Shown: piece by piece, positions 8,601-32,000 of the stretch
Layout: every line of letters begins with the position of its first letter
How positions within the stretch are numbered: the first letter of the stretch is position 1
NCBI GenBank assembly: GCA_950097015.1
Contig: CATNEN010000011.1
Location: 2,046,001 to 2,110,000 of the forward strand
Direction: 5' to 3'
Source: Macrostomum hystrix
Taxonomy: Eukaryota > Animalia > Platyhelminthes
DNA length: 64,000 nt
Notes under the pieces: model-generated
What the model was told of the DNA's origin: nothing
Databases searched by the model: none
The model's input: only the letters and a program-made list of their open reading frames with translations
Made by a program: the position numbers and the translations under genes

Positions 8601-11600
8601 AACACACCCTCCGTCCAGCTGTCATCTTCGATGGGCTTTGACACCGGGTCAGACTTCTTGAGCCCGACGCCCTTGCCCTCAGCAGTTGATAGCTTCATAG
8701 CAGCGTCCAACGCTCTTCTGCACTCGGCAAACTCGACATTCGTCCAGAGGCACCAGTCCTTGCGATGCACGTTGCGCATTTGGTATTGTAGCATTGAGAA
8801 GAAGTCCTTCAGGGTACCAGCCGAGTACCGTTCGTTCCGTTTTGTCCGGACCTCCAGGATAAACAACTTCAGGAGAAAGTTCAGGTCCGTCTTGTCAAAC
8901 TCATCCATGTCCTTGATAACCATGATGGATGGTCCACCATTCGTCGCCCATTCTTGCTTCTTAAACGCGTGCCATTCATTGAAAGTAGACAGCATCCACT
9001 CGCATTTCTTTACGGTGTTCGGAGGGACCGTGCCGCCAATCATGGCCTCCGCCTCGGCCTCAGTCAAGCTTTCAAATCGAGGGCTAGACATATACAAGCG
9101 TCTGCTATTCTGTCCTGTTCTGTCTTTTTCGCATAAAGGTTGTCTTTTTTAGCGTCTACCCTCCTCTCGGATTTTGATTTTCACCATAGACTACAGACAG
9201 AGCGTAGCAAGAAACAGAAGACTTAAAGTGCAATGAAAGTCGGCAGCCAAGTGGGGGATACATACCATCTCTCCCACTTATTTCGGCTGTCTAGGGTGCA
9301 AAGGCACTCGGCGCGAATTTCATTGACCTCGGCTTCGCCTCGGTCAATAAATTTGCGCCTCGAGCCTTTACACCCTGGCAGCCGAAATAAGTGGGAAAGA
9401 TTATACATTTATCGACCCGGGCGATAAATAATTGAAATGCTTTAAGACATAGATTGCGATAGCGTGCAAACGGGGAATGCATAAAAAGGCAACGTCTACA
9501 GAGTAGATTTAACATGAATAAGCAACAATCTAATTAATTAGTAGCATCAGCTACAAGCAGAACATCTTATTGCTTGTTGGCTACTTTTAGACTAATGTTG
9601 ATATCCGCTTCAGCACTTCCATTAATTTTATATACTCGCACACATCGGGACAAAAATTCGGTTTATAATCTAAAATCCATGATTTTTTAGATCGCGAAGG
9701 CCTGTCTGATCGATTTTCAACTGAGGCAATGAATGTTTTAAAACACTGCTCCTCTGTTAGTTCGAAATTTCTGAATCAAATTTCCAATGTCAACTTCATC
9801 AGCTACGGCAGCGTTGACTACCTGGCTAAGCAGCAGGACGCTATTGAGACTCTCAGTCGTGCTCTCAAAGCAAATATCAATATTAAAAGCGTTCTAGAAA
9901 CTGCTGTAGGAATGAAGCAACAGCTCGATGCAACATTGGATGTGTTGAACAACCTGTTACAATTTCTTGAAAACGTTACCGATCCCCAGATGGGTAAGTT
10001 TAGCAATTTTAATAACCTAATAAGTTTTAAATGACAAAAAAAATTGCTTTGTTATTCCAGTGGACCTGCGAGATTTTAGACAGACGCTGTCCAACAGTCA
10101 CTTAAGCAGCGTAAATCTAGGATTTCTGATCGATCCTCAACTGCCACGGGGTTCTCTACAGCTGAAATACTTTCAGTCGTTGATAAACTTTCAAAATGAA
10201 ATTCAACAAATAGCTACTGGATTTGATCGGCTATCGCGAAGCAGAACATTTGAGGGAAGTCTTGGCAGAGCAGTGCGATTTCAGTTCAAAAAAAATAATG
10301 AACAGAAATTGCAAATCGATAAGCTCCTCCCATGTCTTGCTGCAGCTATTGAAGACTGGGAAGGCCAGGTTGCTAGTCTGCAGTCAAAACAGGCTACTTT
10401 GGCTACAGCCGAGAAGTTCCTTGGCAATCTAGCAAAAGATCCCAAAAAATTAGCTGAAGAATTTCGCTGCTTTCAGTCTGGCTGGGACCAAAATGCTTGG
10501 ACAGAGTACGTTAGACGGATTCTATTCGCAATTAAAATTTCAAGCTATTCTAAAGCTGCATCGGCTATCACTAAGGTTCTAGAGGCATTTAGTGTAACAG
10601 ATGAACTCGCTTTGTTAAAAAGAGTACTCCAGATAGGGAGAGGAAGCAGGGACACGCCTTTACAAAGCATTGAGATGGCTCAAATCGACCAATTTGAATT
10701 TCTAGAAGAGGTTTCACGAGATGACTTGTTTGTACCAATGCTGGATGCCATTAGAAAAAGCTTCGATTTCTGTCAGTGGGTTCGCGCGAATGTACAGCGA
10801 CAAGACCTTAAAACCTTCTTTGATCTTGCAATGATTTATCTAGGCGACTCTGGCGATTTAGAAAGGAAAAAGATCGAAACGTTTAACCACGTTGTAACTG
10901 AACTCGATGAAGTTATATACGAACTTGGAGTAGCTCAACGAGAGCGAAACGCTAACGTGGCTACCTTCCTACATCAATGCGGCAGAATTTTAGAGAAGGT
11001 CAGAGCCAGCCCGGGTTTGATTCAAGAACTCGGAGAAACAAGTTCTCGTTTGGACTGGATCAAAGCAGTAAAAGAGAACCAGGGCTCTGTTGAAAAATCT
11101 ACCATCAAGAAAATCGAGGCTATAGTGGCTACTGGTTTCGTTTACATTGGCTGTTTGCTAAATAAAGACGAGCCATTTTTATTGAAGGCGACTTCGATTA
11201 GTGAACACGAATGCGGAAAAGAGGAAGTTATGGAATTTGATATCGAAGATGTGCGCGATCTTCAGTCCAAGCTGATGCTCATCGCAGGACAGTCTTACGA
11301 GAATCGAGACCTTCTAGAGCGCTTCGTGAGTTTAACAACGAGCATTTTCAGACTTATCGATGTGTACAAAGAGTTCAAACTGCACTGCTGTGTCTTGTGT
11401 GAGAAAGTAGCTATGAAATTCAATCTAAAGGCCTCGAGTAAAAACAATGCTTCAATAGAGCTTCGCTATTGCAACCCACCAAAGACTATTAAGTTTGCGT
11501 ACGATGACATTGCTGCTGGATTAACGGACTTATCGAATGTTTTCCAAGACTGCCTCAACGAATGGAAGGCCGTAGTACAGAACGTTAGAGTGTCTCATCA

Positions 11601-14600
11601 TTCCTTAAACTTTTTCAATCTGAAGCAAATCAGACATTTTCAGACTGAGCTGGCTCCATTGTTTTGCACTGCAGATGCAGTTGATCAAGTCAGTCAAATT
11701 TTGCTCCATTTGCTTGGCTACCTGAACCCGAATTGTTCCGTTGAGGATATCAATCGTACAGTTGACGAGGTTGTCGTTGAAAGAGCTCAGGGCTCTCACG
11801 GCCAAACTCAAAGGAATGATGCTCACTCAATCGTCACTGAGCACCTGCGAGACGAAGGATTCGGTGAGGACATCATCAAACAGACTGTGCGTATTCTCTT
11901 CCGCAACACAGATCTGGAAGACCTACCCACTGTTGAAGAGCTACAAGAGCAGGCCATCGATTTAGCTTATAAAATAGAAAAAAACACAGTGACACAATCT
12001 GACAAGCAACCAAGAAAGGAGTGGAAGACCGCTGATCAGGAACTTATTGCGGCTGAAGTCGGTAATCTCTCGGCTCATGAGGCCTTTAAAAAACTGTGGC
12101 AAATTTATCTCAGAAACATTGACACGTCTCATAAAGACTTCTTGAGTTTTAAGGACGTTGCTCTTTTCCTCAGCCACATTGAAAAGCAAAAGTGCAGTCC
12201 GAGATCTCGGCGTAAGATTCAAGGCTCCTTCAGAAACCAGTTTAAACATGGAAAACCGATTTCACTAAGTCTGGAGTCGAAAGATCAGCTGCTAGCAACA
12301 CTGTTTCTATTTCAGCAGGCGTATGATGCACTTCCATATTTTGAGGAAGTTTTAATTTGTTGTGAGGAAACAACCGAAGAAGAAATTGTTGTCTTTTTGC
12401 ATCGAGCAATTCTAGATAAAAATCCGGAGTCCATCTATGTAATAATGAATGCTGATCAACTCACATACGATCTATCAGTGACTGCCGAAGAGCATTTTAG
12501 CACCCTTCTTGACCGCGTCAACAGCAGCACCGAGTCATATCTGTTTGCTCTATCATCTTCAGAAAGTCAAAAGCAGTTCCCCTTTTGCAACGCTCTTAGT
12601 CTGTTTCAAAGGGATCTACCAACCAAGCCTAGGCAGCAAAATATCGTCGACTGGGTCGCAAAGTTCATGAAAAGAGAATCCGGTCCAGCACAGAGTAGCT
12701 TTCTCTGGATCAAGTCGGATCGATCAGGAATGGGAAAGTCGCACCAATGCCTTGAGATTTCAAAGCTTCGGTCAATAAAAGTACCTTATGTATTTTGCTG
12801 CAGTGATTCACACCTAAATGTCGATAAGCTGTATGAGTTCTTTGAAAAAGCCGAGGATCAAAGCATAAGAGGCCAGACATTTCATTTGGACATTGCTCGC
12901 GAGGTGCAGACGGGTTTCGACAATGTGTTCACCCAGTTGGCACTCTTTGGAGCCATCACCGACTCGAACGGACGGGTTTGGCGCAGAAGACAGCAAGACT
13001 TGTACTTGCTGGAGCATTCAATAAACTTTCTATTCAAGACCGAGTTTTTCATTCTTAAGTACTTGCCATCGATAACCTGCGTGTCACCTACAGAAGCCCT
13101 GCGCAATTTAGAAGCGGGTGAGATGGGAACTGTTTGGAAACCTCTGCTTAGCGAGACATGCCTTCAATCAGAAATTTTCAAGCGACCTGCTATGTACCTT
13201 GCATCACTTGCAAATCAAACTGCGGTGAACTTTAGCTTAGAAACTCCAATTCCGTCGATTGAAATCGTTCGCCTCTTGATGATTAGCTGCGGCATTCAGA
13301 ACCCGTCGTGGCTCGAACTGAAGAATTTCGCCCGTTTCTTTAATTGTCAGCTTGTGGACTTTGAGCGGTCTCCATTCTGCGGGCCTGTGGCTGAGCAAGA
13401 CCTGCCTGGCTTTAGAAGATTCGTGCTCTCCTGTCTTCTGCTAATGTCAAAGGATTTTTCTAGCCGTTCGCTCAACATTGCGGACGAAAGTGAAGCGGCG
13501 CAAAACAATGCGCGAGACGATGACCAGTTGATCGAAAACTTTGAAGTTCGTCGACGCTGGGAGCACACGAGTCACCCTTATTTGCTCTTCAATCAAGATG
13601 GAACAACCTTTACATTCGTAGGATTCACTGTGAGTGCAGAAGGGCATCTCTTGGACAGCTCAAGTAACGCGGTTGTACAGCAAGGCATTATGAGCCAGCA
13701 GCTCTACCAGAGCCTCACTACTCAGCGAGTTCGACTTCAAGAACGGTTTGAAGACCTGAGTCGTGAGAACAAGATTGAGAGAATGAGAATGATCTTTGGC
13801 TACTCGGATGCCAATTTTCCTGATCCCGATCCGTCTTACGAGCTCACGATGGATAACGTTAAGAAAATGATTGCAATCTACATGCGACTCAGAAGCGAGA
13901 TTCCGGTTGTTCTGATGGGTGAAACAGGCTGCGGAAAGACAAAGCTTGTTGAGTTTTTATCACGAATCATGCTGCCGTTCCAATCAGACATCCGCAACAT
14001 GCGTATTCTTAAGGTTCATGGTGCTGTAACAACCGCCGATGTAGTAAAAGCAGTTAAGGAGGCAGTGGAGCTGTCTCGTCAAAATCACGCAGAGACTCCG
14101 TACACAATTCTGTTCTTTGACGAAGTGAACACAACAAGCGCAGTTGGACTGATAAAGGAGATAATGATTGACGGCAGGATCGACGGTCAAAGGATAAGCT
14201 TTGCTTATGGTCTTCGGTGCATTGCTGCATGCAATCCATACCGAAAACACCCAGAAGCCACAATCAAGAGGTTAGAAAACAGTGGTTTGGGCTACAGAGT
14301 AAGAAAGGAAGACACTCGAGATAAATTTGGCAATGTTCCGATGAGGCATTTAGTCTATCGTGTGAAGCCGCTTCCACTTTCGCTGATCAGCGTTCTATGG
14401 GACTTTGGCCACCTCTCAGAGGACTCAGAAAGAAAGTACATCACAAGGATGGTGGAGTCGCGGCTTCGCACTAATGCCGTACAGAAGGCGCGCCTTGTTG
14501 AGCTTGTGGCGGCATCGCAAGAATTCATGCGTAATACTGACGACGAAACTAAGTACGTCTCTCTAAGAGAGGTTGAGAAAGTCATTGTTGTGTTTCAATG

Positions 14601-17600
14601 GCTTTCAAATGGATTGCTTACAGGTTTAGACGACCAAGGAGAAGATGGAGAACCAGAGTGTGGAGAGGAAACACTGATCAAAATCATGACGCTCGCATCA
14701 TGTTATTTAAGTCGCTTGCCAAAAGAGCAGAAGAAAGGCTACCTGGAGCTGCTTTCACGAGTTCTGAAAGCAAATTTGAGTTATCATGACATCTCGCAAG
14801 TGATCACGCGGTGCCATCAAAGACTTCTTAATGACATTTCGGAACAACTGCCAAAATCGATCGCGAAGAATGAAGCCCTCAGAGAAAATGTCTTCATGAT
14901 GGTGCTCTGCATCACACTTCGAATTCCTCTGTTTGTCGTCGGAAAGCCTGGCAGCTCAAAGTCGCTCGGAAAGTCAATTGTAAAGAGTAACATGCTGGGT
15001 ACGAACTCGCAAGGAGCCATATTCCGACAGCTGCCAAACACGCAAATGCTGTCATTCCAGTGTTCCCCTTGGTCAACTTCTGAGGGAATCATCAAGACAT
15101 TCGAGCAATGCTCCCAGCTACAGAAGGACAAAGACTTGGAAAAGTTTGTGTCTGTCGTTATTCTTGACGAAGTTGGCTTGGCTGAAGACAGCCCTAAGAT
15201 GCCCCTGAAGGCTCTACACCCACTTCTTGAAGAAGGATACTTCACTGACTCATTGCAAGTAGCGGAGGACAGCAGGCATCGCAAAGTTGGATTCATTGGA
15301 ATTTCCAACTGGGCACTTGATCCAGCGAAAATGAACAGAGGTCTGTACCTGTTGCGAGATGTGCCCACACATGACGACCTTCTGGAAACTGCAAAAGGAA
15401 TTTGCCAGAATCAAGAGCGCAAAGAAAAACTTCGAACGTTCCTCGGGCACGTCACAACGTTTTATGAGGAAATCTACAAGCACACACAGAAAGAGTTTTT
15501 CGGCCTTCGCGACTATTTCAGCTTGGTAAAGCATCTCGCTTCAAGAAATTCGCTGGATGAAATTTCAGTAGCTCGCAGCATCAAGAGGAACTTTAGCGGC
15601 TTTGAAAATCTGGACCCGGTTGATTTCTTTGCTAAAAAGATTCTTCTCAAACACATCAACCTGGGTGAGTATTCAGCCATCAGAGACGCTCTTGCCTCAG
15701 AAGGTGATGAGCAGCGGTATCTCCTCCTAATTACAGAGAATTATTCAGGCTTCAAGATTCTTCCCCAGCTGCTTTTGGACCGCCAGGTTAACATAATTTT
15801 TGGCAGTAGCTTCCCAAAGGACCAGGACTACTCGAAGATTTGCCTGGACATCAATCGTATCAAGATCTGCATGGAGAGAGGAAGTACTGTTGTGCTTCTG
15901 AACATGGACGCATTGTATGAGAGCCTTTACGATGTCTTGAACCAATATTATGAGCAGTGCGGTCAGGATCGCTTCGTTGACTTAGGTCTTGGAACCCACC
16001 GGCTAAAGTGCAAGGTCCATGAGAAGTTTCGAATGATTGTGGTTGCAGAACAGGCCACAGTGAGAGAACGATTTCCAATCCCACTGATCAACCGGCTGGA
16101 GAAGCACAAGCTTTCAACATCAGCGGTCCTTAAGTCGGACCAGCAAGAGTTCGTGACCAAGCTTTTAAAGTGGGCAAAGGAATTTTTTCCGAATGCAAAT
16201 CATACCAAAAATCCCAGCAATGTGTTTGTGGGCTACCACGAAGATGTGATTCCATCGCTGGCATTGGAGGTCGAATCAGACGAAGACGCTGTGAAGAAAA
16301 GCATCTTGTTCGTAGCAACTCCTGACAGTCTTGTTAGACTCGATCAGACACGGCTAAAAGATGAGAAGATAAATTACATGAATTATCACTATGAAAGCCT
16401 TTGCCTCGAAAGTCTCCTAAGGTTTCTTGCTAACTACACATTTCTCAAGCCGTTTCTTCAGATCACAACATTTGACCGACTTCTAGCGACGAAGCAAATC
16501 GAGGAGCTGTCAAGGCAACACTTGCAGCTATTCGGAGCTGTGACATCTGCGAATCTGAGCAAATTTGAGAGTGAGACACAGTTCATGGAATTTCTTAGAT
16601 GCTTCCTAGAGCAAGACGGTATTTCGACGCTAGTTCTGCAATTCGAAGGTCTTAGACTGCAGTATCAGAATCTGCTCGCGTGCGCTAAGTACCTAATCGA
16701 GGACCAGTTTAAAGAACTAGAAACAAGAGATCCGAATGCCTGCAGTCGGAAGCGAGTTATTCTGCTTATTAAGCTGGTCCGATCGCACGCCAGCCCATTC
16801 ACTGGGTTCGACTGTGGCAGATGGCAGTCTGTGCACATCGAGGAACTGGTGCCATCGGGCAGGGTGAATATTAGGTTGCTCGATAAAATGAGCGTATCAA
16901 ACGCCATGGAGCAGAGCCTTGAAGCTCTCCGTGATGAGGCTGACGAAAATGACGGTGTAAGAATGGAAGTTGAATACTCGCTACTGCTAGATAGAGAGTT
17001 GCACTCACCGATTAACCTGCGCCAGTTGATTGAGCAGTCGTTGCACCAGGCCATGAGTTTACTTAGAGACGGACATGATGGCAAAGGCAGCGAGACCGAT
17101 AATCGTCTGATGGATAGACAAGAAGTTCTGTTTGACGCCTTGAGAGGTAAGCTGTGCGTTGTGCAGCCTAGTATTTAGTCTGGAAATAAAAAACTTATCA
17201 TGTTTATTTCAGAGAATAATGTGCAAAGCAGGCAATTCTTTGGTTGTATGTGCCGCTTTGCCATCAAGGCTCTAGTGTGGATGGAGGAGAGCTCAGTGGC
17301 TCAGTACAGTCCAAGTGAATGGTTGAGTCGTGAGGCAGCCCAGGACCTGAATGTACTCAACGCCGGAACTTTTATGTAAGTAAAGCCATTCAATGATAAA
17401 TCTTCTTGGCCAAATCTAGCTTGGTTGATGCGAGCCTCACCAAGGCAAAGATGCTCGCGTTGCCCCGCCCACAGCGAGAGCACGTGGCGCATCCTGAAGC
17501 AGAGAGTGGCTCCCGCCATCGCCTGCTTCCTGGCCTTCGCTGACCGAGACAGCAACCTAAGCTGCTACAGACAGGAGGCAATGAGGAGTCTATGGCTGCG

Positions 17601-20600
17601 CCTGGTGGAGCCAGCATCCGGTCTGGACCAGATAACAGAACACCTGGTGAAGGGAACCACCGGAGACTTTCAGAGAATTGAAGTGGTCTCCTCGTCGCCT
17701 GACGGTCGCCGATTCGCCTGCCGTTTTCCGTTCTCGTGGGCGGTGGCTGAGCGGCTAGAGCGAATCTGCAGCGAAAATCGCAAAGGTCAGGAGCGCCTTG
17801 ACGAACTGTTTCTGACCACCACTCCTATCGGTCAGATCCTCGCTGCCGAGGAGGCTGCGCCAGAGCTGGTCGGCGCCTTCTGCCACGACCTCCTGCACAT
17901 CCGTATTCCCGGAGTGACGGAGCAGGTCTCTGACGTCCTGGTTCCCGTGATGCTGCGTGGCATCAGCGGCAGAGCCGAAGCCTCTCTGGGCGCTGCGGTC
18001 TTCGAGAGCTTCCTGCTAGTCAATGAATTTAGCCAGCAGCTGACACTGGTGACACGGCTCATGCAGAAGGTTCAGGGCCTGGTCCTGCCTGTGAACCGGA
18101 TCGACAGGCTGAGCGAGCTGCCAGAGGTAAACGACAGATGTCCTGTCAGGTTTGCTGTCTAACAGGAACTGTTCCTGTCTAACAGGAAGGTTTCCTGTCT
18201 AACAGGAAGGTTTCCTGTCTATCAGGAAGGTTTCCTGTCTAACAGGAAGGTTTCCTGTCTAACAGGAAGGTTTCCTGTCTAACAGGAAGGTTTCCTGTCT
18301 AACAGGAAGGTTTCCTGTCTAACAGGAAGGTTTGCTGTTTAACAGGAAGGTTTCCTGTCTAACAGGAAGGTTTCCTGTCTAACAGGAAGGTTTCCTGTCT
18401 AACAGGAAGGTTTCCTGTCTAACAGGAAGGTTTCCTGTCTAACAGGAAGGTTTCCTGTCTAACAGGAAGGTTTCCTGTCTAACAATAATGTTTCTTGTCT
18501 AAAAGGAAGGTATCATGTCTAACAGGATGTTTTCCTGTTTAACTGTCTAACAGTAGGGTGTCCCGTCTAACAGGAGAGTTTTTCATTTTTAACAGGATTC
18601 TCTGCCTGAGAAAGTTTTTTATGTGCATATAACCGATAATGTTCCAGGCGGAAAAAACTGTACTTTTTAAAGCTTTCGACTTCCCAATCCTCTCCCATCA
18701 GGCCCTGTTTTTCGCATTTTTCGAGTACTTTGAGCAGAACCGGCGCGACCTGAACTCGGCCATGAAACGCCAGGTTTGGCTAAGTCGAGTCGAACGCGCC
18801 CAGGCTGTGATTGACAGCCTGTTAAGCAACTTTGGCAGTCCTGCAATGGACTTGCAGTGGCAGCGCATCGTGTGCGTGTACCTATTCCTGAAGAATGTCA
18901 CCGCCCCCTTCGACGCCAGTGGAGACATCGGCGAGAATTCCCTCAAGCCAATCCAGCTGTGGACTGTGAGTTGCTTTTAAAAAACACAGAATATTTTTGC
19001 ACTACTCGAATAAGACATTTGTAAGTAGTATATTATGGTTGATTTCACCCGCCACTACTGCAGTCTCTGACTAAGAACTCTAGCGCGAACTTCAGTGAAG
19101 TGTCCGGCCTGCGTCTTGTTGAAGAGTTTCTCAAGAAGATGAAAGACGACCTGACAGAGAAGCTGCAAGGGTGAGCAATGTTTCAGGCTTTGGGTTTCTG
19201 GGACAGAAAGGAAGGCTCGACTTCCAGGTTGAGATTAGGCTCGAGAGAGATGAGACATGGCTGGAGAGAGATGAGACATGGCTGGAGAGAGATGAGACAT
19301 GGCTGGAGAGAGATGAGACATGGCTGGAGAGAGATGAGACATGGCTGGAGAGAGATGAGAAATGGCTCGAGACAGATGAGACATGGCTGGAGAGAGATGA
19401 GACATGGATGGAGAGAGATGAGACATGGATGGAGAGAGATGAGACATGGATGGAGAGAGATGAGACATGGATGGAGAGAGATGAGACATGGCTGGAGAGA
19501 GATGAGAAATGGCTCGAGAGAGATGAGACATGGATGGAGAGAGATGAGACATGGATGGAGAGAGATGAGACATGGATGGAGAGAGATGAGACATGGATGG
19601 AGAGAGATGAGACATGGATGGAGAGAGATGAGAAATGGCTCGAGAGAGATGAGACATGGCTGGAGAGAGATGAGACATGGCTGGAGAGAGATGAGACATG
19701 GCTGGAGAGAGATGAGAAATGGCTCGAGACAGATGAGACATGTCTGGAGAGAGATGAGACATGGATGGAGAGAGATGAGACATGGATGGAGAGAGATGAG
19801 ACATGGATGGAGAGAGATGAGACATGGATGGAGAGAGATGAGACATGGATGGAGAGAGATGAGAAATGGCTCGAGAGAGATGAGACATGGCTGGAGAGAG
19901 ATGAGACATGGCTGGAGAGAGATGAGACATGGCTGGAGAGAGATGAGACATGGCTGGAGAGAGATAAGACATGGCTGGAGAGAGATGAGACATGGATGGA
20001 GAGAGATGAGAAATGGCTGGAGAGAGATGAGACATGGATGGAGAGAGATGAGACATGGCTGGAGAGAGATGAGACATGGCTGGAGAGAGATGAGACATGG
20101 CTGGAGAGAGATGAGACATGGATGGAGAGAGATGAGACATGGCTGGAGAGAGATGAGACATGGCTGGAGAGAGATGAGACATGGATGGAGAGAGATGAGA
20201 CATGGCTGGAGAGAGATGAGACATGGATGGAGAGAGATGAGACATGGATGGAGAGAGATGAGAAATGGCTGGAGAGAGATGAGACATGGATGGAGAGAGA
20301 TGAGACATGGATGGAGAGAGATAGAATAATAATAATAATAATAAAATAAAATTAATAATAGTAATAGTAGAATAATAATGAGATAAGACAGTAGTGAGAT
20401 CAGACTGGAGATGTGAGAAAGCGGAGAGACGATTGTCTGCAATGGAAGACAATGCCCAGAGTAAGATGCCGCTGTTTAAACCGCACATTCATTAAACTGT
20501 GATTTGCAGAACCATCACCTGTCCCACTTGTGATTTGGCCTCCGAGCGGCTCCTGATTCTGCCGTGCAACGATCGTCTGTGCAGGACCTGCTTCGACAAT

Positions 20601-23600
20601 ATTCTAACTGTAGCCGCAGTACAGGCTGAGGACAACCCGAATGTGGCAGCCGCAGTCGTCTGTCCTGCCTGTCAGGTTCCGTTCGACCCGGCCGCGGCAA
20701 CTCGAGCCCGACCTGCCGCCCTGGATGAGTTCAAGGCTCGCTGCAACGCCTTCCTTATGGAGCTCATCACCCGCCTGTGCTTCCGTCGTGGCGGTCATGG
20801 CGGTAGGCCGCCTAGCAGCCAGCTGTGCGACCGTCTTCTGGCCTATGTTACCAAGAGCGTTCAGCATGACGTCGCCGCCATAACCTGCTTTGTTGACGGC
20901 AACGAAGAAGATGGCGATGGCAATACTCCAGTGTTTCGATCCTTTATTCTGCAGCAGCTGCTGGCTTACCGAGAGAGTGAAGTGCTCAATCAACTGGATG
21001 AACATCTCAAAATGGCTAATAGGATTATCGACTCGCCGGATCATTTGGCTCTCATTGTCGTCCACTGTCTGGAGGTAAGCTGATAAGCTGACAACGGCTA
21101 CCCCAAAACATGCAATCTGAAGTCACGTGATCAGCGGGGCAGATGGGTAGATAAGTCCAAAGCACGCACTGTTAAGTCACGTGATCAGCGGGACAGAGGA
21201 CCAGGCAACAGCCACCCAAAAACACGCTCTCTAAAGTCACGTGATCAGCAAGACAGATGGGTAGATAATAGCCAGTCCAAAACACGCACTCTGAAGTCAC
21301 GTGATCTGCGTCACAGGGTAGCAGGCAACAGCCACCCCAAAACACGCATTCTAAAGTCGCGGGACAGAGGGGCAGGCAACAACCACCCCAAAACACGCAT
21401 TCTAAAGTCGCGTGATCAGCGGGACAGAGGGGCAGGCAACAACCACCCCAAAACACGCATTCTAAAGTCGCGTGATCAGCGGGACAGAGGGGCAGGCAAC
21501 AACCACCCCAAAACACGCATTCTAAAGTCGCGTGATCAGCGGGACAGAGGGGCAGGCAACAACCACCCCAAAACACGCATTCTAAAGTCGCGTGATCAGC
21601 GGGACAGAGGGGCAGGCAACAACCACCCCAAAACACGCATTCTAAAGTCGCGTGATCAGCGGGACAGAGGGGCAGGCAACAACCACCCCAAAACACGCAT
21701 TCTAAAGTCGCGTGATCAGCGGGACAGAGGGGCAGGCAACAACCACCCCAAAACACGCATTCTAAAGTCGCGTGATCAGCGGGACAGAGGGGCAGGCAAC
21801 AACCACCCCAAAACACGCACTCTAAAGTCGCGTGATAAGCGGGACAGAGGGGCAGGCAACAACCACCCCAAAACACGCACTCTAAAGTCGCGTGATCAGC
21901 GGAGGGGGACAGAGGGGCAGGCAACAACCACCTCAAAACACTCGTTTAAAGTCGTGTAATGGGCGGGACAGAGGTAACCGAGATCCTCATCTGAGTGTCG
22001 TCCCAACCCAACACCGTTTGCAGGACCTGTGGATCTCCCAGCTCGCCTCGTTTCCCATCGAGCAGCGACTTTTTCGCGCCATCAGCCAGATCAGCCAAGC
22101 TGCGGCTCCCAACATATCGCCGCACGATGCCAATCCGCTCGACCTTCAACGGCTGCGTCAGGTAGCCAATTGGCGAGTCTGTCTGTCGTTGCTCGCGTCC
22201 AGCATCTCCCAGCTGCCCGATGGGACTCGAACTGTTGACCTGCCGCCGCTGCAAGACGCTCGACGACGGGAGCAGCTGGCCAGATCGCTGCTCAGGCACC
22301 AGTGGTCTCGCGCGTACTTCCTGCGCTGCCTGAGCCGCTACGGTGGCACCTGCGCTGCTCTGGAGCGACTGAAAACAGACGAATACCTGGCCAAGGTGTT
22401 CAGAGAGGAGATGAAACTCATCGAGGGTCAGGTTGAACTGCCGGACATCCTGTTGGGACACTCGGAGCTGTACAGAAATGTTCGTCGGTGTCTGTACCAG
22501 TCCTACCTTACTGGCGAGCTTGCGCAACAGGTGATTGATTATGATTTCTGCTCCTGTGCTCTAGAGTGTCCATAGTGTTAGAGGGTGTCCATAGTGTTAG
22601 AGGGTGTCCATAGTGTTAGAGGGTGTCCATAGTGTTAGAGGGTGTCCATAGTGTTAGAGGGTGTCCATAGTGTTAGAGGGTGTCCATAGTGTTAGAGGGT
22701 GTCCATAGTGTTAGAGGGTATCCACAGTGCTGCAGGGTGTCCACAGTGCTGCAGGGTGTCCACAGTGCTGCAGGGTGTCCACAGTGCTGCAGGGTGTCCA
22801 CAGTGCTGCAGGGTATCCACAGTGCTGCAGGGTGTCCACAGTGCTGCAGGGTGTCCACAGTGCTGCAGGGTATCCACAGTGCTGCAGGGTGTCCGCAGTC
22901 AATGCCTTCATCCAGCTCATGCCAAACCATTGCAGAGACCCGACATGGCGGAAGCCGACGGTTCCGTGCTGGTCCTGGCGACCCTGATCGCCACCTACCG
23001 ATTGCGTCACATGCATGGCCGCTGCGATGTTCAGCAGCTGACTGCCTGCATCAACCTCATGCTCAGCTGGATGTCTGAGCCAGCTAGGCAGTTGCACAAT
23101 CAATTAGCTCACCTGACAGACCCAGCAGCTGACAACAATCACCAGTTAGCTCTGCTGAGAATTCACCTGGCATTCGTGCTCAATACCTGTCAATCAGACT
23201 TTGTCAACTTCCTCAACCAGCTGCCTAATAGTTATCAGAACTGGTTGCTACCCGGAATGCGACACGACGAACTCTTTGAGGCCTTCACGGCTCAGGGTAT
23301 TGGCGGCACTCGGGCCTACGGTGAGTTTACATGCTTTTGACGCTTTTCGTAAATTAGCCATTGTAACCATTGTAATGTTCGCCTCGCTTCACCGACTTTA
23401 TTCACTGAACTATTGCAGCTTGCCCGAACGGACATCCGTACTATGTGGCGAATGTGAGTTTAAATGCGACACTAAATCTGAAACATCGATTATGAATTCT
23501 TCTTTCTTTGTCTCCCTTGACTTGTTTTGTTTTCCACCATTTTATCTATATTTCCTACCGTTCTTTTTCTCACCCTTCCGTCCTATGTTTTCACCCTTCC

Positions 23601-26600
23601 CTCCCTTCTTCTCGCCCTTCCCTCCCTTCTTCTCGCCCTTCCCTCCCTTCTTCTCGCCTTTCCTCCCTTCTTCTCGCCTTTCCCACACTACTTCTCAGCC
23701 TTCCCTCCCTTCTTCCCTCTCGCCCTTCCCTCCCTTCTTTTCGCCTTTCCTCCCTTCTTCTCACGCTTCCCACGCTACTTCTCGCACTTCCTCCCTTCTT
23801 CTCGCCCTTCCGTCCTATGTTTTCACCCTTCCCTCCCTTTTTCTCGCCCTTCCCTCCTTTCTTCCCTCCCTTCTTCTCGCCCTTCCCTCCCTTCTTCTCG
23901 CCTTTCCTCCCTTCTTCTCGCCTTTCCCACACTACTTCTCACCCTTCCCTCCCTTCTTTTCGCCTTTCCTCCCTTCTTCTCACGCTTCCCACGCTACTTC
24001 TCGCACTTCCTCCCTTCTTCTCGCCCTTCCGTCCTATGTTTTCACCCTTCCCTCCCTTTTTCTCGCCCTTCCCTCCTTTCTTCCCTCCCTTCTTCTCGCC
24101 CTTCCCTCCCTTCTTCTCGCCTTTCCTCCCTTCTTCTCGCCTTTCCCACACTACTTCTCACCCTTCCCTCCCTTCTTTTCGCCTTTCCTCCCTTCTTCTC
24201 ACGCTTCCCACGCTACTTCTCGCACTTCCTCCCTTCTTCTCGCCCTTCCGTCCTATGTTTTCACCCTTCCCTCCCTTTTTCTCGCCCTTCCCTCCTTTCT
24301 TCCCTCCCTTCTTCTCGCCCTTCCCTCCCTTCTTCTCGCCTTTCCTCCCTTCTTCTCGCCTTTCCCACACTACTTCTCACCCTTCCCTCCCTTCTTTTCG
24401 CCTTTCCTCCCTTCTTCTCACGCTTCCCACGCTACTTCTCGCACTTCCTCCCTTCTTCTCGCCCTTCCGTCCTATGTTTTCACCCTTCCCTCCCTTTTTC
24501 TCGCCCTTCCCTCCTTTCTTCCCTCCCTTCTTCTCGCCCTTCCCACACTACTTCTCACCGTTCCCTCCCTTCTTCTCGCCATTCCCTCCCTTCTTCTCGC
24601 CCTTCCCACACTATTTCTCACCCTTCCCTCCCTTCTTCTCGCCGTTCCTTCCCTTCTTCTCGCCATTCCCTCCCTTCTTCTCGCCCTTCCCACGCTACTT
24701 CTCACCCTTCCCTTCCTTTTTCCCTCTCTTCTTCTCGCCCTTCCCACACTATTTCTCACCCTTCCTTCCCTTCTTCTCGCCGTTCCTTCCCTTCTTCTCG
24801 CCTTTCCCACACTTCTTCCTACTCTTGCCTCTCTTCTTCTCACCCTTCCCACACTTCTTCCCACCCTTCCCTCTCTTCTCGCTCTTCCCTCTCTTCTTCT
24901 CGCCCTTCCCTCCCTTCTTTACGCCCTTCCCTCCCTTCTTCCTATATTATCTGCTGTTATATTTGCCTGGCCAGTCACCAATAAGCCAGCATTGACTAGC
25001 CGCAGCCGTTTCCCAATGACAGTGCGGCCAGCCGATGCAGCAGGCTCGCTGTGCAGACTGCGGCAGCGCCATAGGCGGTCAGAACCACCAGCTGGTGGCG
25101 GGCAACGCGGGCTACCAGGCCGCTGACAGAACTCAGCGCGGCTTCGTGCCGGCGATGGACCAGAACCGGCCGGAACCGGTTCGCCAGCTGTCGGCGGGCG
25201 GGGTGGCGCTGCTTCGATCGCTGCAGTCGCTGGCGATGCTGCTAGCGCGTCAACCGGCTCAGCAGTTTCTCGTAGAGTTCCGCACCGGCCTGACGATGTT
25301 CGGCCGAGCCACGGGCCGCAGCGAGGAGGATGCGGCCCACGCCCTGCACCTCCTGCTGCTTCGCTGCCTGTCGGTCCCCGCCGCCGCCGCAGCGTTCAAC
25401 CTCGGCAGCAATGACGGACGTCGCGAGTTCGAACATCGCATCGAGACCCGCCTCCTGCGGCCTCTGCTGGACAATCTGACCGCCTGGCTTCAACAATCGA
25501 ACCGTGTCGTTGGCCAGGACGACCTTGGCCGCACCTCCGAGCTGGTCCGCCTGGTTCAGGAAACCTCCGAGCTGGACCGTCAGCAGGCTCATGAAGGACA
25601 GCTGTGGCGCTTCCGTCAGGTCATCTCCGTTGAGCACGCCGTGCAGACGTTCCGGGAGCTCGGCGCCGAGCAGAAGACCAGACACGCCCTCATCGAAGCC
25701 GTCACTCGCTGGGAATTCGCTCTGCGCCACGTCAGGGCCCTGCCAGACCTGCTGCAGCTGGTCAAGGACCTGGTGGCCACCTGGAAGCTCAACTTGTCTA
25801 CCAAAGATGCCAAGAATCATAGCGTCCAGTCCCTGCTTAGGAATGACAGGTTGGCAGGCTTTAGTCTGTGCTCATTGACTGTGCTCAGTGACTGCTCAAT
25901 GACTGCGTGCTCAGTGGCTGTGCTCAATGACTGTGTGCTAAGTGGCTGTGTTGAATGACTGTGTGCTCAATGACTGTGTGCTCAGTGACTGTGCTCAATG
26001 ACTGTGTGCTCAGTGACTGCTCAATGACTGCGTGCTCAGTGGCTGTGCTCAATGACTGTGTGCTAAGTGGCTGTGTTGAATGACTGTGTGCTCAGTGACT
26101 GTGCTCAATGACTGCGTGCTCAGTGACTGTGCTCAGTGACTGTGCTCAATGACTGTGTGCTAAGTGGCTGTGTTGAATGACTGTGTGCTCAATGACTGTG
26201 TGCTCAATGACTGTGTGCTCAGTGACTGTGCTCAATGACTGCGTGCTCAGTGACTGTGCTCAGTGACTGTGCTCAGTGACTGTGCTCAATGACTGCGTGC
26301 TCAGTGACTGTGCTCAGTGACTGTGCTCAGTGACTGTGCTCAATTACTGTGTGCTCAATGACTGTGTGCTCAATGACTGTGTGCTCAGTGGCTTTGCTCA
26401 ATGACTGCGTGCTCAGTGACTGTGCTCAGTGACTGTGCTCAGTGACTGTGCTCTGTGACTGTGCGTTTAGTGTCGGGTCATTGACGGTAGGTTTAGTGAC
26501 TGTGAGGTTGGGGTCAGGGTTGGAACTTAAGTTATTATTAACTTACTGAAGTTAATGATTGTTCTATTCCTAGAATTAAACGTACAGTACAGTATGATAC

Positions 26601-28322
26601 AACGTATCAGAAAAATGTGACAATATTCTAATACTCTACTACAGTGAGTAGTTAATACGCTTATTCCCAATCGAATTATTTCCGCAGGTTTGAGGCCGGA
26701 GTTCGAGTCTTCCAGCGCACCTGGGAGGCTCTCCGTGGTCACCTGGCTGGCAGGGGAGCCAGATTTCCTGAAGCCGTCTTCCCCATTACGCTGCACATAA
26801 ATCCCTTTGAGGACATGAGACTGGCTGCTCTTTTGCCCCATCGGGGTGTCTGGGGCCGCTGCATTGTGGGCCTGGTGCAGCTGCTGATGGAAGGCCAGAA
26901 TGCCGTTCTGGAGGCCAGCAAGATTCAGTGCGACGAGATCGACGTCTGCCAGGTTTGGGTCGCGTATTTGCGTTTAATAAACCTTTGCAGTGACGCAAGC
27001 TTTTTCAACTCAAAATTATATTTTCCGTCATATGCTTCCAGGCTACTAACAAGTAGGCTAGTTGCGCATTTTGCAAGTATAATTTCAAGTTAAGATTCCT
27101 TTCAGACTACTATCAAGTAGGCTAGCTGCGCATTTTGCAAGTATAATTTCAAGTTAAGATTCCTTTCAGACTACTATCAAGTAGGTTAGTTGTGCATTTT
27201 AATACCATAATTTATGTTTCGAATTTCCGATGGCACCGCAGGCGGACACAGCCTCGATGATCGCGTACGACCCGGACGCGGACCTGCTGCCAGTCTTGCT
27301 GGCTAATTGTGCCTACTCCCTGCGTCCCGGCCAGGGCTGCCGGGTGGACTACAACTTCGCCGGCCTGCAGCAGCAACTAGCTGAGCTGCTGGTGCGAGGC
27401 AAACTCAAGCTGACTGGCCACCTACCGGAGATGCTCTATAAGGAAGAGTTTAACCTGATGGAGCAGTTCCAGCTGCTGGACAAGGTAAGCTGCTGCTGAA
27501 AACCTATTTCGGGCTGCTAAGATGGTCATTGAGCTAGTTACAGCCAGTTACAGCCCGTTACAGCCAGTTAAAGCTAGTTAAAGCCAGTTACAGCCCGTTA
27601 CAACCAGTTACAACTACTTGTAGTTACAGCTAGTTACAACCAGTTAGAGCTAGTTACAGCCAGTTACAGCCAATTACAAATAGTTACAGCCAGTTACAGC
27701 AGTCCCATCCCCTTCCCAGGCGGTGCCGCAGCGCGCTACTCCGAGCAGCTCGGCAGTTGCCCACGCGCTCAGCTCGGATCTGCCCAGCAGTACTCCCGTC
27801 ATCACTTCGCTGCTGGAGGAGCTGCTGCCGCCGACCGTCAGCTTCCTGACTTCGCTGGCGCCGCAGGACCGGTCGCAGCTGCTGCACGACTTCATGACGA
27901 AGTCGCTGCGGATGCCGCACGGCCTGCCGGAGCCGCTGCGCCGCTGCGTCACCATCGACCACGCCCGCCTGCTGTGGCTCGCGCTGGACCGTCTGCGCTG
28001 CCAGCAGCTCGCTGACGATGGCTTCGAGCCGTTCCGCGACTGTCCAGGCCTCGAGGCGGCTCCGCTGGAGCCTCGGCTGAGCCGCCTGCTGCCCTGCGAC
28101 CTTCGCAACCGGCGCAGCCTCCTGCTGGAGCGGCTGCACAGCCTGCTGAAGCTGCAGCTGGCCAGCAGGTCGGACCTGCTCGACCTGCCGCTCTCCGAGA
28201 TCGCCCTCATCTACACCGAATACGAAGGCGTCTTCGATGACTTCAACGACCAGCTGCTCTGCAGGCACGCCGCCGCCATCTGGACGGCCACCTTCTCGTG
28301 TGAGGAATTGCGCGGCGATTGA
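2659..28322 (+). CDS. RNF213: RNF213/mysterin-like giant AAA+ ATPase / E3 ubiquitin ligase, 22 exons, ~5435 aa
   Basis: Exons read by hand, all GT-AG and phase-consistent: 2659-5421, 5539-5786, 5891-6139, 6246(or 6234)-6450, 6573-6914, 7008-7118, 7205-7339, 7425-7620, 9691-9993, 10061-17146, 17213-17375, 17475-18126, 18648-18965, 19064-19170, 20510-21074, 22024-22530, 22936-23320, 23419-23453, 25023-25849, 26688-26952, 27242-27484, 27720-28322. The sum is 16308 nt, divisible by 3. In-frame TAG at 2641 lies upstream of the ATG. RNF213 hallmarks: N-terminal KFCSQC zinc ribbon; Walker A SGMGKS (~12724), GETGCGKT (13918-13941) with ILFFDE, and GKPGSSKS (14941-14964) with VVILDE; SNWALDPAKMNRG; IPLINRLEKH; RING (exon 15); RZ finger (exons 17-19). 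Confidence 0.95.
3304..3910 (+). repeat. Coding 45-nt tandem repeat (QDQP[L/P]QHGSQMSTVP, ~13.5 copies) in RNF213 exon 1
   Basis: Unit cagcatggctctcagatgtccaccgttccacaggaccagcctc(c/t)g; nearly identical copies, all in frame. Confidence 0.95.
8121..8228 (+). repeat. 52-bp direct tandem duplication inside the intron-8 element
   Basis: ggccaaataaatggctccgccaataggaaagcaagattcatttatctgg at 8121 and 8173. Confidence 0.9.
8528..9097 (-). pseudogene. Truncated Crypton-type tyrosine recombinase ORF (DNA-binding half only)
   Basis: 189-aa ORF; family similarity ends at GVFGS, after which the sequence is unrelated and a stop follows. Confidence 0.75.
10061..17146 (+). CDS. RNF213: RNF213 giant exon 10 (7086 nt) encoding stalk and dynein-like AAA+ core
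   Basis: Acceptor ttccag at 10060 and donor AG|GTAAGC at 17147. Lies within the 2372-aa ORF carrying the Walker A/B motifs. Confidence 0.95.
18150..18595 (+). repeat. 20-bp minisatellite (aacaggaaggtttcctgtct), ~20 copies, RNF213 intron 12
   Basis: Period visible directly; the unit is self-complementary (acaggaa/ttcctgt). Confidence 0.95.
19243..20322 (+). repeat. 21-bp purine-rich minisatellite (gagagagatgagacatgg[c/a]tg), ~51 copies, RNF213 intron 14
   Basis: Direct periodicity; followed by an (AAT)n-like tract. Confidence 0.95.
20510..21074 (+). CDS. RNF213: RNF213 exon 15 containing a variant RING finger
   Basis: CPTC-x11-CNDRLCRTC-x23-CPAC; acceptor ttgcag at 20509 and donor GTAAGC at 21075. 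Confidence 0.9.
21118..21975 (+). repeat. 60-bp minisatellite, ~14 copies, RNF213 intron 15
   Basis: Identical 60-nt lines at 21421-21780 (gggacagaggggcaggcaacaaccaccccaaaacacgcattctaaagtcgcgtgatcagc). Confidence 0.95.
22563..22895 (+). repeat. 19-bp minisatellite with two variant blocks, RNF213 intron 16
   Basis: gtgtccatagtgttagagg copies followed by gtgtccacagtgctgcagg copies. Confidence 0.9.
23419..23453 (+). CDS. RNF213: 35-nt micro-exon of RNF213 encoding (A)CPNGHPYYVAN, first half of the RZ finger
   Basis: tattgcag|CTTGCCCGAACGGACATCCGTACTATGTGGCGAAT|gtgagt. It bridges the phase-1 donor at 23321 to the phase-0 acceptor at 25022. Confidence 0.93.
23560..24945 (+). repeat. Polypyrimidine array (~21-bp cttcttctcgcccttccctcc-like monomers) with a 219-bp higher-order period, RNF213 intron 18
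   Basis: Almost entirely C/T on the + strand. Identical antisense ORFs recur at 23939-24151 and 24158-24370 (offset 219). Confidence 0.9.
25865..26465 (+). repeat. Mixed 13-15-bp minisatellite (ctca[a/g]tgactg(tg)tg), RNF213 intron 19
   Basis: Direct inspection. Confidence 0.9.
27043..27200 (+). repeat. 64-bp tandem repeat, ~2.5 copies, RNF213 intron 20
   Basis: ctact...aagtagg.tag.tgcgcattttgcaagtataatttcaagttaagattcctttcaga starting at 27043, 27107 and 27171. Confidence 0.9.
27535..27700 (+). repeat. 10-bp minisatellite (cagccagtta), RNF213 intron 21
   Basis: Direct inspection. Confidence 0.85.
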
Positions 28323-29031: not shown

Positions 29032-32000
29032 GTGTTGTGTCATTGTGAGTGTCTGCAGTCTGTTGTGTCAGTGTGAGTAGCTGCAGTCTGATGTGTCGGT
29101 GTGAGTAGCTGCAGTCTGTTGTGTCATTGTGAGTGTCTGCAGTCTGTTGTGTCAGTGTGAGTGTCTGCAGTCTGTTGTGTCAGTGTGAGTGTCTGCAGTC
29201 TGTTGTGTCAGTGTGAGTAGCTGTTGTGTCAGTGTGAGTAGCTGCAGTCTGATGTGTCAGTGTGAGTAGCTGCAGTCTGATGTGTCAGTGTGAGTAGCTG
29301 CAGTCTGATGTGTGAGTGTGAGTAGCTGCAGTCTGATGTGTCAGTGTGAGTAGCTGCAGTCTGATGTGTCAGTGTGAGTAGCTGCAGTCTGATGTGTCAG
29401 TGTGAGTAGCTGCAGTCTGATGTGTGAGTGTGAGTAGCTGCAGTCTGATGTGTGAGTGTGAGTAGCTGCAGTCTGATGTGTCAGTGTGAGTAGCTGCAGT
29501 CTGTTGTGTCAGTGTGAGTAGATGCAGTCTGATGTGTCAGCGTGAGTAGCTGCAGTCTGATGTGTCAGTGTGAGTAGCTGCAGTCTGATGTGTCAGTGTG
29601 AGTAGCTGCAGTCTGATGTGTCAGTGTGAGTGTCTGCAGTCTGATGTGTGAGTGTGAGTAGCTGCAGTCTGATGTGTGAGTGTGAGTAGCTGCAGTCTGA
29701 TGTGTCAGTGTGAGTAGCTGCAGTCTGATGTGTGAGTGTGAGTAGCTGCAGTCTGATGTGTCAGTGTGAGTAGCTGCAGTCTGATGTGTCAGTGTGAGTA
29801 GCTGCAGTCTGATGTGTCAGTGTGAGTAGCTGCAGTCTGTTGTGTCAGTGTGAGTAGATGCAGTCTGATGTGTCAGCGTGAGTAGCTGCAGTCTGATGTG
29901 TCAGTGTGAGTAGCTGCAGTCTGATGTGTCAGTGTGAGTAGCTGCAGTCTGATGTGTCAGTGTGAGTAGCTGCAGTCTGATGTGTGAGTGTGAGTAGCTG
30001 CAGTCTGATGTGTGAGTGTGAGTAGCTGCAGTCTGATGTGTCAGTGTGAGTAGCTGCAGTCTGTTGTGTCAGTGTGAGTAGATGCAGTCTGATGTGTCAG
30101 CGTGAGTAGCTGCAGTCTGATGTGTCAGTGTGAGTAGCTGCAGTCTGTTGTGTCAGTGTGAGTAGCTGCAGTCTGATGTGTCAGTGTGAGTAGCTGCAGT
30201 CTGATGTGTCAGTGTGAGTAGCTGCAGTCTGATGTGTGAGTGTGAGTAGCTGCAGTCTGATGTGTCAGTGTGAGTAGCTGCAGTCTGATGTGTGAGTGTG
30301 AGTAGCTGCAGTCTGATGTGTGAGTGTGAGTAGCTGCAGTCTGATGTGTCAGTGTGAGTAGCTGCAGTCTGATGTGTCAGTGTGAGTAGCTGCAGTCTGA
30401 TGTGTCAGTGTGAGTAGCTGCAGTCTGTTGTGTCAGTGTGAGTAGATGCAGTCTGATGTGTCAGCGTGAGTAGCTGCAGTCTGATGTGTCAGTGTGAGTA
30501 GCTGCAGTCTGATGTGTCAGTGTGAGTAGCTGCAGTCTGATGTGTCAGTGTGAGTAGCTGCAGTCTGATGTGTCAGTGTGAGTAGCTGCAGTCTGATGTG
30601 TGAGTGTGAGTAGCTGTAGTCTGATGTGTCAGTGTGAGTAGCTGCAGTCTGATGTGTCAGTGTGAGTAGCTGCAGTCTGATGTGTCAGTGTGAGTAGCTG
30701 CAGTCTGTTGTGGCAGTGTGAGTAGCTGCAGTCTGATGTGTCAGTGTGAGTGTCTGCAGTCTGATGTGTCAGTGTGAGTAGCTGCAGTCTGATGTGTCAG
30801 TGTGAGTGTCTGCAGTCTGATGTGTCAGTGTGAGTGTCTGCAGTCTGATGTGTCAGTGTGAGTGTCTGCAGTCTGTTGTGGCAGTGTGAGTAGCTGCAGT
30901 CTGATGTGTCAGTGTGAGTGTCTGCAGTCTGATGTGTCAGTGTGAGTGTCTGCAGTCTGATGTGTCAGTGTGAGTGTCTGCAGTCTGTTGTGGCAGTGTG
31001 AGTAGCTGCAGTCTGATGTGTGAGTGTGAGTAGCTGCAGTCTGATGTGTCAGTGTGAGTAGCTGCAGTCTGATGTGTGAGTGTGAGTAGCTGTAGTCTGA
31101 TGTGTCAGTGTGAGTAGCTGCAGTCTGATGTGTCAGTGTGAGTAGCTGCAGTCTGATGTGTCAGTGTGAGTAGCTGCAGTCTGTTGTGGCAGTGTGAGTA
31201 GCTGCAGTCTGATGTGTCAGTGTGAGTGTCTGCAGTCTGATGTGTCAGTGTGAGTAGCTGCAGTCTGGTGTGTCAGTGTGAGTGTCTGCAGTCTGATTTG
31301 TCAGTGTGAGTGTCTGCAGTCTGATGTGTCAGTGTGAGTAGCTGCAGTCTGGTGTGTCAGTGTGAGTGTCTGCAGTCTGATGTGTCAGTGTGAGTAGCTG
31401 CAGTCTGATGTGTGAGTGTGAGTGTCTGCAGTCTGATGTGTCAGTGTGAGTAGCTGCAGTCTGATGTGTCAGTGTGAGTAGCTGCAGTCTGATGTGTCAG
31501 TGTGAGTAGCTGCAGTCTGATGTGTGAGTGTGAGTAGCTGCAGTCTGATGTGTGAGTGTGAGTAGCTGCAGTCTGATGTGTGAGTGTGAGTGTCTGCAGT
31601 CTGATGTGTGAGTGTGAGTGTCTGCAGTCTGATGTGTCAGTGTGAGTAGCTGCAGTCTGATGTGTCAGTGTGAGTAGCTGCAGTCTGATGTGTGAGTGTG
31701 AGTGTCTGCAGTCTGATGTGTCAGTGTGAGTAGCTGCAGTCTGATGTGTCAGTGTGAGTAGCTGCAGTCTGATGTGTCAGTGTGAGTAGCTGCAGTCTGA
31801 TGTGTCAGTGTGAGTGTCTGCAGTCTGATGTGTCAGTGTGAGTGTCTGCAGTCTGATGTGTGAGTGTGAGTAGCTGCAGTCTGATGTGTCAGTGTGAGTA
31901 GCTGCAGTCTGATGTGTCAGTGTGAGTAGCTGCAGTCTGATGTGTCAGTGTGAGTAGCTGCAGTCTGATGTGTCAGTGTGAGTAGCTGCAGTCTGATGTG

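What the first reader, a model, noticed from the sequence alone, without database searches (positions are those of the whole stretch)
23300..25130. Complete catalytic RZ finger hidden across three exons, with its first half on a 35-nt micro-exon
Splicing 23320->23419-23453->25023 yields AYACPNGHPYYVANCGQPMQQARCADCGSAIGGQNHQL. The spacing C1-H5-C12-C21-C24-H33 equals that of the human RNF213 RZ finger (C4505, H4509, C4516, C4525, C4528, H4537), so the zinc ligands and the catalytic Cys/His pair are all present. Skipping the 35-nt exon would delete two zinc ligands and shift the frame, so this micro-exon could be an on/off switch for non-protein (LPS-type) ubiquitylation in an invertebrate. Gene predictors would probably miss it.
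Basis: partly seen in the sequence, partly recalled or inferred. Interest (0 to 1): 0.75.

Follow-up and report, generated by a model that had tools for sequence, protein, structure and literature searches.

The report
Ancient 35-base exon in RNF213
A flatworm copy of the immune ubiquitin-ligase gene RNF213 does carry half of its catalytic zinc finger on a 35-base exon, but the same tiny exon sits at the same spot in snail, amphioxus and fish RNF213 genes, so it is an old, ordinary part of the gene, and nothing shows that it acts as a switch.

Summary
The window holds an RNF213 gene of a Macrostomum flatworm on the + strand. Its RZ finger is split as described: an exon ending at 23320, a 35-nt exon at 23419-23453, and an exon starting at 25023. 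All splice sites are canonical. The six Cys/His residues have the human spacing.

Pfam's RZ model matches the 35-nt exon alone (positions 13-24, E 0.006). It matches the next exon at positions 25-53 (E 1.4e-9).

The exon is not special to this animal. A 35-nt exon with the same boundaries and intron phases is present in:
- three paralogues in this genome;
- the M. lignano orthologue, where five of six changed codons are synonymous;
- a snail, amphioxus and a teleost fish.

It is therefore an ancient exon of RNF213, most likely constitutive, and many public gene models already include it.

The remark about gene predictors is partly right. Seven of 44 database models that carry the second half of the finger lack the first half. 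The M. lignano annotation stops before this region.

The on/off switch idea has no support. Skipping shifts the frame and gives a stop after 33 codons, which would lose the whole C-terminus. I could reach no RNA data. Interest is low.

The parts
10060..17178 (+). Giant exon (open frame of 2372 aa) encoding the dynein-like AAA core of RNF213
   Evidence: phmmer against PDB: mouse and human RNF213, E = 0, about 1089 bits, query 731-2290 aligned to mouse 1267-2905. Pfam AAA hit at residues 1283-1360. M. lignano proteins are 75-86% identical.
20502..20700 (+). RING-like motif of the E3 module, with Asp where the canonical His ligand sits (LPCNDRLCRTC)
   Evidence: Translation and comparison with M. 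lignano P0011, fish P0065 and snail P0111. No Pfam RING hit at E <= 0.01 on this frame.
22936..23320 (+).
   Evidence: Sequence. tblastn of M. lignano P0011 residues 1656-1787 maps to 22936-23334. 75% DNA identity to the M. lignano orthologue with no gaps.
23321..23418 (+). Intron of 98 nt, phase 1
   Evidence: GT..AG. 49% identity with indels against M. lignano.
23419..23453 (+). 35-nt exon: 2 nt plus 11 codons (CPNGHPYYVAN), carrying the equivalents of metal ligands C4505 and H4509
   Evidence: Same exon in three paralogues, the M. lignano orthologue, snail, amphioxus and fish.
23454..25022 (+). Intron of 1569 nt, phase 0, nearly filled by a C+T-rich minisatellite (23563-24941, 21-nt unit in a 219-nt higher-order unit)
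   Evidence: The same intron is 388, 430, 87, 69, 212 and 99 nt in the other genes measured. The M. lignano orthologue has no such array.
25023..25849 (+). Exon starting with the predicted nucleophile Cys (C4516 equivalent), then C4525, C4528 and H4537 equivalents and the start of the C-terminal domain; the 3' end near 25849 is approximate
   Evidence: Pfam PF20173 positions 25-53, E 1.4e-9. Mouse RNF213 3939-4219, E 1.3e-13. Candidate donor GT at 25850.
26704..28322 (+). Remaining C-terminal exons; the gene ends near 28283-28322
   Evidence: tblastn of M. lignano P0011 residues 2077-2426 (of 2435) maps to 26704-26964, 27236-27442 and 27717-28283.

Best explanation
This is the RNF213 gene of a Macrostomum flatworm that is not M. 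lignano. The 35-nt segment at 23419-23453 is a genuine exon, most likely constitutive. It encodes the first two metal ligands of the RZ finger and ends exactly one codon before the catalytic cysteine. The exon, its length and both intron phases are inherited from the common ancestor of at least flatworms, molluscs and chordates. When spliced in, the gene encodes a complete RZ finger. By homology with human RNF213, that finger takes ubiquitin from an E2 onto the cysteine and passes it to a substrate. Shown here: gene identity, exon boundaries, motif completeness and cross-phylum conservation. Inferred: inclusion in the mRNA of this species, and enzymatic activity.
For: Gene identity: PDB hits to RNF213 at E = 0 and E 1e-13; 655 homologues, the best from M. 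lignano. Exon: canonical AG/GT sites and a matching frame. Pfam RZ profile split 13-24 / 25-53 across the two exons. Chance below 0.1%. Conservation: 35-nt exons with AG + 2 nt + 11 codons + GT in own-genome paralogues on contigs C11, C3 and C41; in M. lignano L013:18682-18716; in the snail Batillaria L015:41202-41236; and in the fish Xyrichtys L014:17144-17178 (all). The same exon is in amphioxus, with its Cys codon at L016:20423. Against M. lignano the exon has five synonymous codon changes and one Val-to-Ile change, while the flanking introns drop to 49% and 28% identity with indels. The M. lignano paralogue model P0011 contains the full finger and maps exon by exon onto the window, including 23421-23459. 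The rest of the gene is intact to its C-terminus.
Against: I obtained no transcript of this species. Two word searches with the exon at 25023 found nothing in their length ranges. Inclusion is therefore inferred from conservation and not observed. Enzymatic activity of any flatworm RNF213 is untested. The RING-like motif has Asp instead of His and did not reach Pfam significance.
Confidence: 0.9

Rival explanations
1. The 35-nt exon is a regulated switch. It is skipped under some conditions, and this turns off RZ-finger ubiquitylation. Because skipping shifts the frame, the realistic form is unproductive splicing: a premature stop leading to mRNA decay or a truncated protein.
For: Skipping gives a frameshift and a stop after 33 codons at 25124-25126, so skipping would abolish function. 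In this species the downstream intron has grown to 1569 nt through a pyrimidine-rich array that the M. lignano orthologue lacks. Pyrimidine-tract binding proteins are known regulators of small exons in mammals (PMC4317164, abstract seen).
Against: No RNA evidence exists. The exon length is not a multiple of three, unlike typical regulated micro-exons. Donor and acceptor sites are strong in every species examined. Flanking introns are poorly conserved between the two Macrostomum species, so there is no sign of conserved regulatory elements. Almost every intron in the 3' half of this gene has its own unrelated minisatellite, so the array is not specific to this exon. Skipping removes the whole C-terminal domain, not only the finger.
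Confidence: 0.07
2. The match is fortuitous or the gene copy is decayed. The 35-nt segment is not spliced in, and this copy makes no functional RZ finger.
For: Only the absence of direct transcript evidence.
Against: Chance is below 0.1%. There is an exact positional match in seven other genes from four phyla. The substitution pattern against M. lignano indicates purifying selection. All mapped exons stay open through to the C-terminus.
Confidence: 0.03

Closest known systems
Human and mouse RNF213 (mysterin) RZ finger
   Same: The six Cys/His residues have identical spacing. The exon starting at 25023 aligns from the nucleophile Cys onward and into the C-terminal domain. The AAA core aligns over about 1600 residues. 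Residue roles are as in PMC11549300.
   Different: Sequence identity is only about 30-45% outside the motifs. The residues before the finger are AY rather than the WY seen in the vertebrate models. The RING-like motif has Asp in place of His. No biochemical data exist for any flatworm protein.
Annotated rnf213 gene models of Xyrichtys novacula (fish), Branchiostoma floridae (amphioxus) and Batillaria attramentaria (snail)
   Same: A 35-nt exon with the same boundaries: a phase-1 intron upstream and a phase-0 intron just before the catalytic Cys. These public models already include the exon.
   Different: Their downstream intron is 99-212 nt against 1569 nt here. In the fish there is an extra intron further upstream, giving a 76-nt exon before the 35-nt exon. 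That stretch is continuous with the upstream exon in the flatworm.
ZNFX1-type RZ finger
   Same: Same Pfam family PF20173. A full-length match exists in this genome on contig C38 (81.5 bits).
   Different: There the finger is encoded on one uninterrupted exon. The split by a 35-nt exon is seen only in the RNF213 genes examined.
Regulated (for example neuronal) micro-exons
   Same: Small size. It counts as a micro-exon only under the <=51-nt definition (PMC4317164, PMC6600660).
   Different: It is longer than the <=27-nt or 3-30-nt definitions (PMC8378409, PMC9929638). It is not a multiple of three, its splice sites are strong, and no conserved flanking intron sequence or alternative use is shown.

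Membership tests
RNF213 (mysterin) family | Dynein-like core of AAA units homologous to RNF213 | tested here: met
   E = 0, about 1089 bits over query 731-2290 against mouse 1267-2905. AAA Pfam hit; 655 homologues, named RNF213 where a source gives a name.
RNF213 (mysterin) family | RING domain in the E3 module | tested here: inconclusive
   A C-x2-C ... C-N-D-x2-C-x2-C ... C-x2-C pattern lies at 20502-20700, at the position where the fish and snail RINGs map. Asp replaces the His ligand, and there is no Pfam RING hit at E <= 0.01.
RNF213 (mysterin) family | RZ finger followed by the RNF213 C-terminal domain | tested here: met
   (PF20173 positions 13-53 over two exons). (255 residues aligned to mouse 3939-4219). 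(exons map to the C-terminus of P0011).
RNF213 (mysterin) family | E2-dependent transthiolation, ubiquitylation of LPS or other substrates | not testable with these tools
   Biochemistry is needed. The role of the residues is taken from PMC11549300.
RZ-type zinc finger (Pfam PF20173) | Four metal ligands (Cys, His, Cys, Cys) plus a Cys/His pair at fixed spacing | tested here: met
   Spacing 1-5-12-21-24-33 read. Profile matches. Profile positions 1-12 were not detected in the upstream exon.
Regulated alternative micro-exon | Very short length that usually preserves the frame | tested here: not met
   35 nt. Skipping gives a stop after 33 codons. It exceeds the 27-30-nt definitions.
Regulated alternative micro-exon | Observed inclusion and skipping in RNA | not testable with these tools
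   No transcript data were reachable; the word searches were blank.
Regulated alternative micro-exon | Conserved flanking intron sequence | tested here: not met
   Window against M. lignano: intron 1 is 49% identical with 19 gap columns, and the start of intron 2 is 28% identical with 21 gap columns.

The most novel reading that the evidence does not exclude
The frame-shifting 35-nt exon has kept its exact length and place since the bilaterian ancestor. It could be a conserved point of unproductive splicing through which animals tune RNF213 output. In this species, the lineage-specific 1.4-kb pyrimidine-rich array in the downstream intron might alter how often the exon is included.
Probability: 0.06. 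Interest if true: 0.55.

Novelty: new member of a known kind. Interest (0 to 1): 0.2.

Why it matters
The finding shows that a free-living flatworm keeps a complete RNF213 with an intact RZ finger, and has three further RNF213-like paralogues with the same split. This extends the family's catalytic module to Platyhelminthes. The practical lesson concerns annotation: the first half of the RZ finger lies on a 35-nt exon in every RNF213 gene examined. Some public models lose it and then look catalytically dead. Anyone inferring loss of RZ activity from predicted proteins should check this exon. It does not open a new mechanism.

Tried and rejected
- **Transcript or gene-model search.** Word searches with the exon at 25023 (311 aa, then its first 120 aa) looked for transcript fragments or short gene models of this species. 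Both were blank within their length limits. This says nothing about longer or shorter proteins.
- **Upstream exon searches.** The PDB and Pfam searches of the upstream exon tail found nothing relevant.
- **RING regular expression.** A standard RING pattern found none in single open frames between 17000 and 24000. The motif turned out to have Asp in place of His.
- **Other genomic loci.** Loci of Mytilus, Dreissena and Gigantopelta homologues were too long to be delivered. Podarcis and the sponge Corticium were not on record. The age of the exon therefore could not be pushed beyond Bilateria.
- **Literature.** Searches for RNF213 together with micro-exon or flatworm terms listed no paper containing RNF213. 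This is weak evidence of absence.
- The joined three-exon peptide was not searched or folded. Exons were searched one by one by reference, so no structure prediction of the assembled finger was made. No contig that I took for human was fetched. The Logan contig behind the unnamed vertebrate protein P0064 was not fetched either. The large representative search was not used, because the identity of the protein was not open.
Full report
**What is in the sequence**

- An open frame ends ...gcc tac g at 23320 and is followed by GTGAGT.
- After a 98-nt interval there is an acceptor AG at 23417-18.
- A 35-nt segment follows at 23419-23453. It consists of ct plus eleven codons, which translate to CPNGHPYYVAN, and it is followed by GTGAGT.
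- After 1569 nt there is an acceptor AG at 25021-22.
- An open frame starts at 25023 with CGQPMQQARCADCGSAIGGQNHQL.

The split codon g|ct is Ala. The second junction lies between codons. The Cys/His spacing 1-5-12-21-24-33 is as stated.

I checked the pieces one by one, by reference.

**Which gene it is**

The 2372-aa open frame at 10060-17178 matches mouse and human RNF213 structures at E = 0 over about 1600 residues.

The exon at 25023 aligns from its first residue with the Cys that opens the second half of the RZ finger. It continues 255 residues into the C-terminal domain (E 1.3e-13). In human chain 8s24 that Cys is index 4556 of a 5247-residue chain. This is C4516 if the 40 extra residues of the chain all sit at its N-terminus; I inferred that offset from the chain length and did not check it. 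The residue spacing supports it independently.

The best protein hits are Macrostomum lignano proteins at 75-86% identity, followed by hundreds of RNF213 proteins from molluscs, amphioxus and vertebrates. The window is therefore from a Macrostomum species other than M. lignano.

An M. lignano paralogue model, P0011, maps onto the window exon by exon to within nine residues of its C-terminus. The mapping includes a separate hit on 23421-23459. The gene is therefore intact and ends near 28300.

**Is the 35-nt exon real?**

Four lines of evidence say yes.

1. Profile match. Pfam's RZ model PF20173 matches the 35-nt exon alone at profile positions 13-24 (E 0.006). It matches the next exon at positions 25-53 (E 1.4e-9). 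The two pieces abut exactly.

2. Chance. A loose pattern (AG, 2 nt, Cys, three codons, His, six codons, GT) occurs once in the whole window on both strands. It occurs in 4 of 20000 shuffles of the 1702-nt interval.

3. Paralogues. A six-frame search of the window's own genome with PF20173 found three further RNF213-like genes, on contigs C11, C3 and C41. Each has a 35-nt exon with the same structure (AG, 2 nt, 11 codons, GT). The encoded peptides are CPNGHPYYIGN, CPKGHLYFVGE and CPNGHPYVIGD. In each gene, an intron of 430, 87 or 69 nt follows, and then an exon that starts with the catalytic Cys.

4. Orthologue. In M. lignano the exon lies at L013:18682-18716. Six codons differ from the window. 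Five changes are synonymous and one is Val to Ile. DNA identity by segment:

| Segment | Identity to M. lignano | Gaps |
|---|---|---|
| Upstream exon tail | 75% | none |
| 35-nt exon | 80% | none |
| Intron 1 | 49% | 19 gap columns |
| Start of intron 2 | 28% | 21 gap columns |

This is the pattern of a coding exon under purifying selection.

**How old it is**

The same exon is present outside flatworms. It has the same 35-nt length, a phase-1 intron before it and a phase-0 intron after it.

| Species | Location |
|---|---|
| Xyrichtys novacula (teleost), rnf213-alpha | L014:17144-17178 |
| Batillaria attramentaria (gastropod) | L015:41202-41236 |
| Branchiostoma floridae (amphioxus) | L016, Cys codon at 20423 |

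The exon therefore dates at least to the bilaterian ancestor. The public gene models of those three species already include it.

The ZNFX1-type RZ finger in this genome (contig C38) is encoded without any intron. The split was seen only in the RNF213 genes examined.

The residue roles are those proposed in the literature. C4505, H4509, C4525 and C4528 bind the metal. C4516 and H4537 are the predicted nucleophile and general base. H4509A and C4516S abolish pathogen ubiquitylation (PMC11549300). The 35-nt exon thus carries two metal ligands, and the next exon begins with the nucleophile.

Skipping the exon does shift the frame. Reading from 25025 gives a stop after 33 codons, at 25124-25126. That outcome would remove the finger and the whole C-terminal domain, or trigger mRNA decay. 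It is not a clean toggle of one activity.

Nothing in the sequence suggests regulated use.
- The splice sites are strong in all eight genes.
- The length is not a multiple of three.
- The flanking introns are not conserved between the two Macrostomum species.

The large pyrimidine-rich array in intron 2 (23563-24941) is absent from the M. lignano orthologue. Nearly every intron in the 3' half of this gene has its own unrelated minisatellite, so the array is not specific to this exon.

I could not obtain RNA data. The switch idea is therefore untested and has a low prior.

**Do gene predictors miss it?**

Partly. Among the 120 listed homologues, 44 carry the second half of the finger.
- 37 also carry the first half: 35 with the exact human spacing, plus one snail and one mollusc model whose spacing differs.
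- 7 lack it: turtle, a bird, elephant shark, two cichlids, Astyanax and one unnamed model.
- Three further models (an ostracod and two amphioxus models) have variant fingers that my second-half pattern did not match.

In the models that lack the first half, the missing piece is about 37-39 residues. In the fish locus it corresponds to a 76-nt exon plus the 35-nt exon, which together keep the frame.

In M. lignano's GenBank annotation, the orthologous gene model stops at the giant exon. No gene is called over the RZ exons.

**Verdict**

The feature is an ordinary, ancient part of RNF213 gene structure and not something hidden or specific to this invertebrate. The gene is a new flatworm member of a known family. 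The switch hypothesis has no support and is unlikely in the form stated.

Noticed in passing
window 18148-18543, 19238-20322, 21157-21974, 22566-22899, 23563-24941, 25866-26464, 29036-32174: Almost every intron in the 3' half of this RNF213 gene holds its own unrelated minisatellite, with units of 13 to 60 nt and up to 52 copies. A 28-nt unit repeated 112 times lies just downstream of the gene. Several arrays are open in many frames and produce long spurious ORFs. The M. lignano orthologue lacks the array in the intron examined.
   Followed up: partly
window 20502-20700: The RING-like motif of this RNF213 has Asp where the canonical His ligand sits (C-N-D). The M. lignano paralogue model P0011 shows the same. 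Fish and snail RNF213 keep the His. Pfam RING models did not reach E 0.01.
   Followed up: partly
L013:15590-19917 (M. lignano NIVC01000952.1): The GenBank gene model of the M. lignano orthologue (P0003, 1809 aa) ends at the giant exon. Clearly homologous exons, including the RZ finger, continue for more than 4 kb downstream with no gene called over them.
   Followed up: partly
proteins P0054, P0082, P0098, P0076, P0115, P0037, P0085: Seven vertebrate RNF213 gene models lack, or garble, the first half of the RZ finger. In four of them the junction fits in-frame omission of two small exons (76 + 35 nt in the fish locus). These are probably annotation errors, but nobody seems to have checked whether such an isoform exists.
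   Followed up: partly
L001 (G000 contig C38:33030276-33030431, minus strand): A second RZ-finger gene in this genome, ZNFX1-like by its motif, encodes the whole finger on one exon (81.5 bits to PF20173).
   Followed up: no
L005/L007 (G000 contig C41:2646407-2646595, minus strand): This RNF213-like paralogue has one extra residue before the general-base His (GGQSMH), so its His sits at position 34 instead of 33. The snail protein P0111 shows a similar shift.
   Followed up: no
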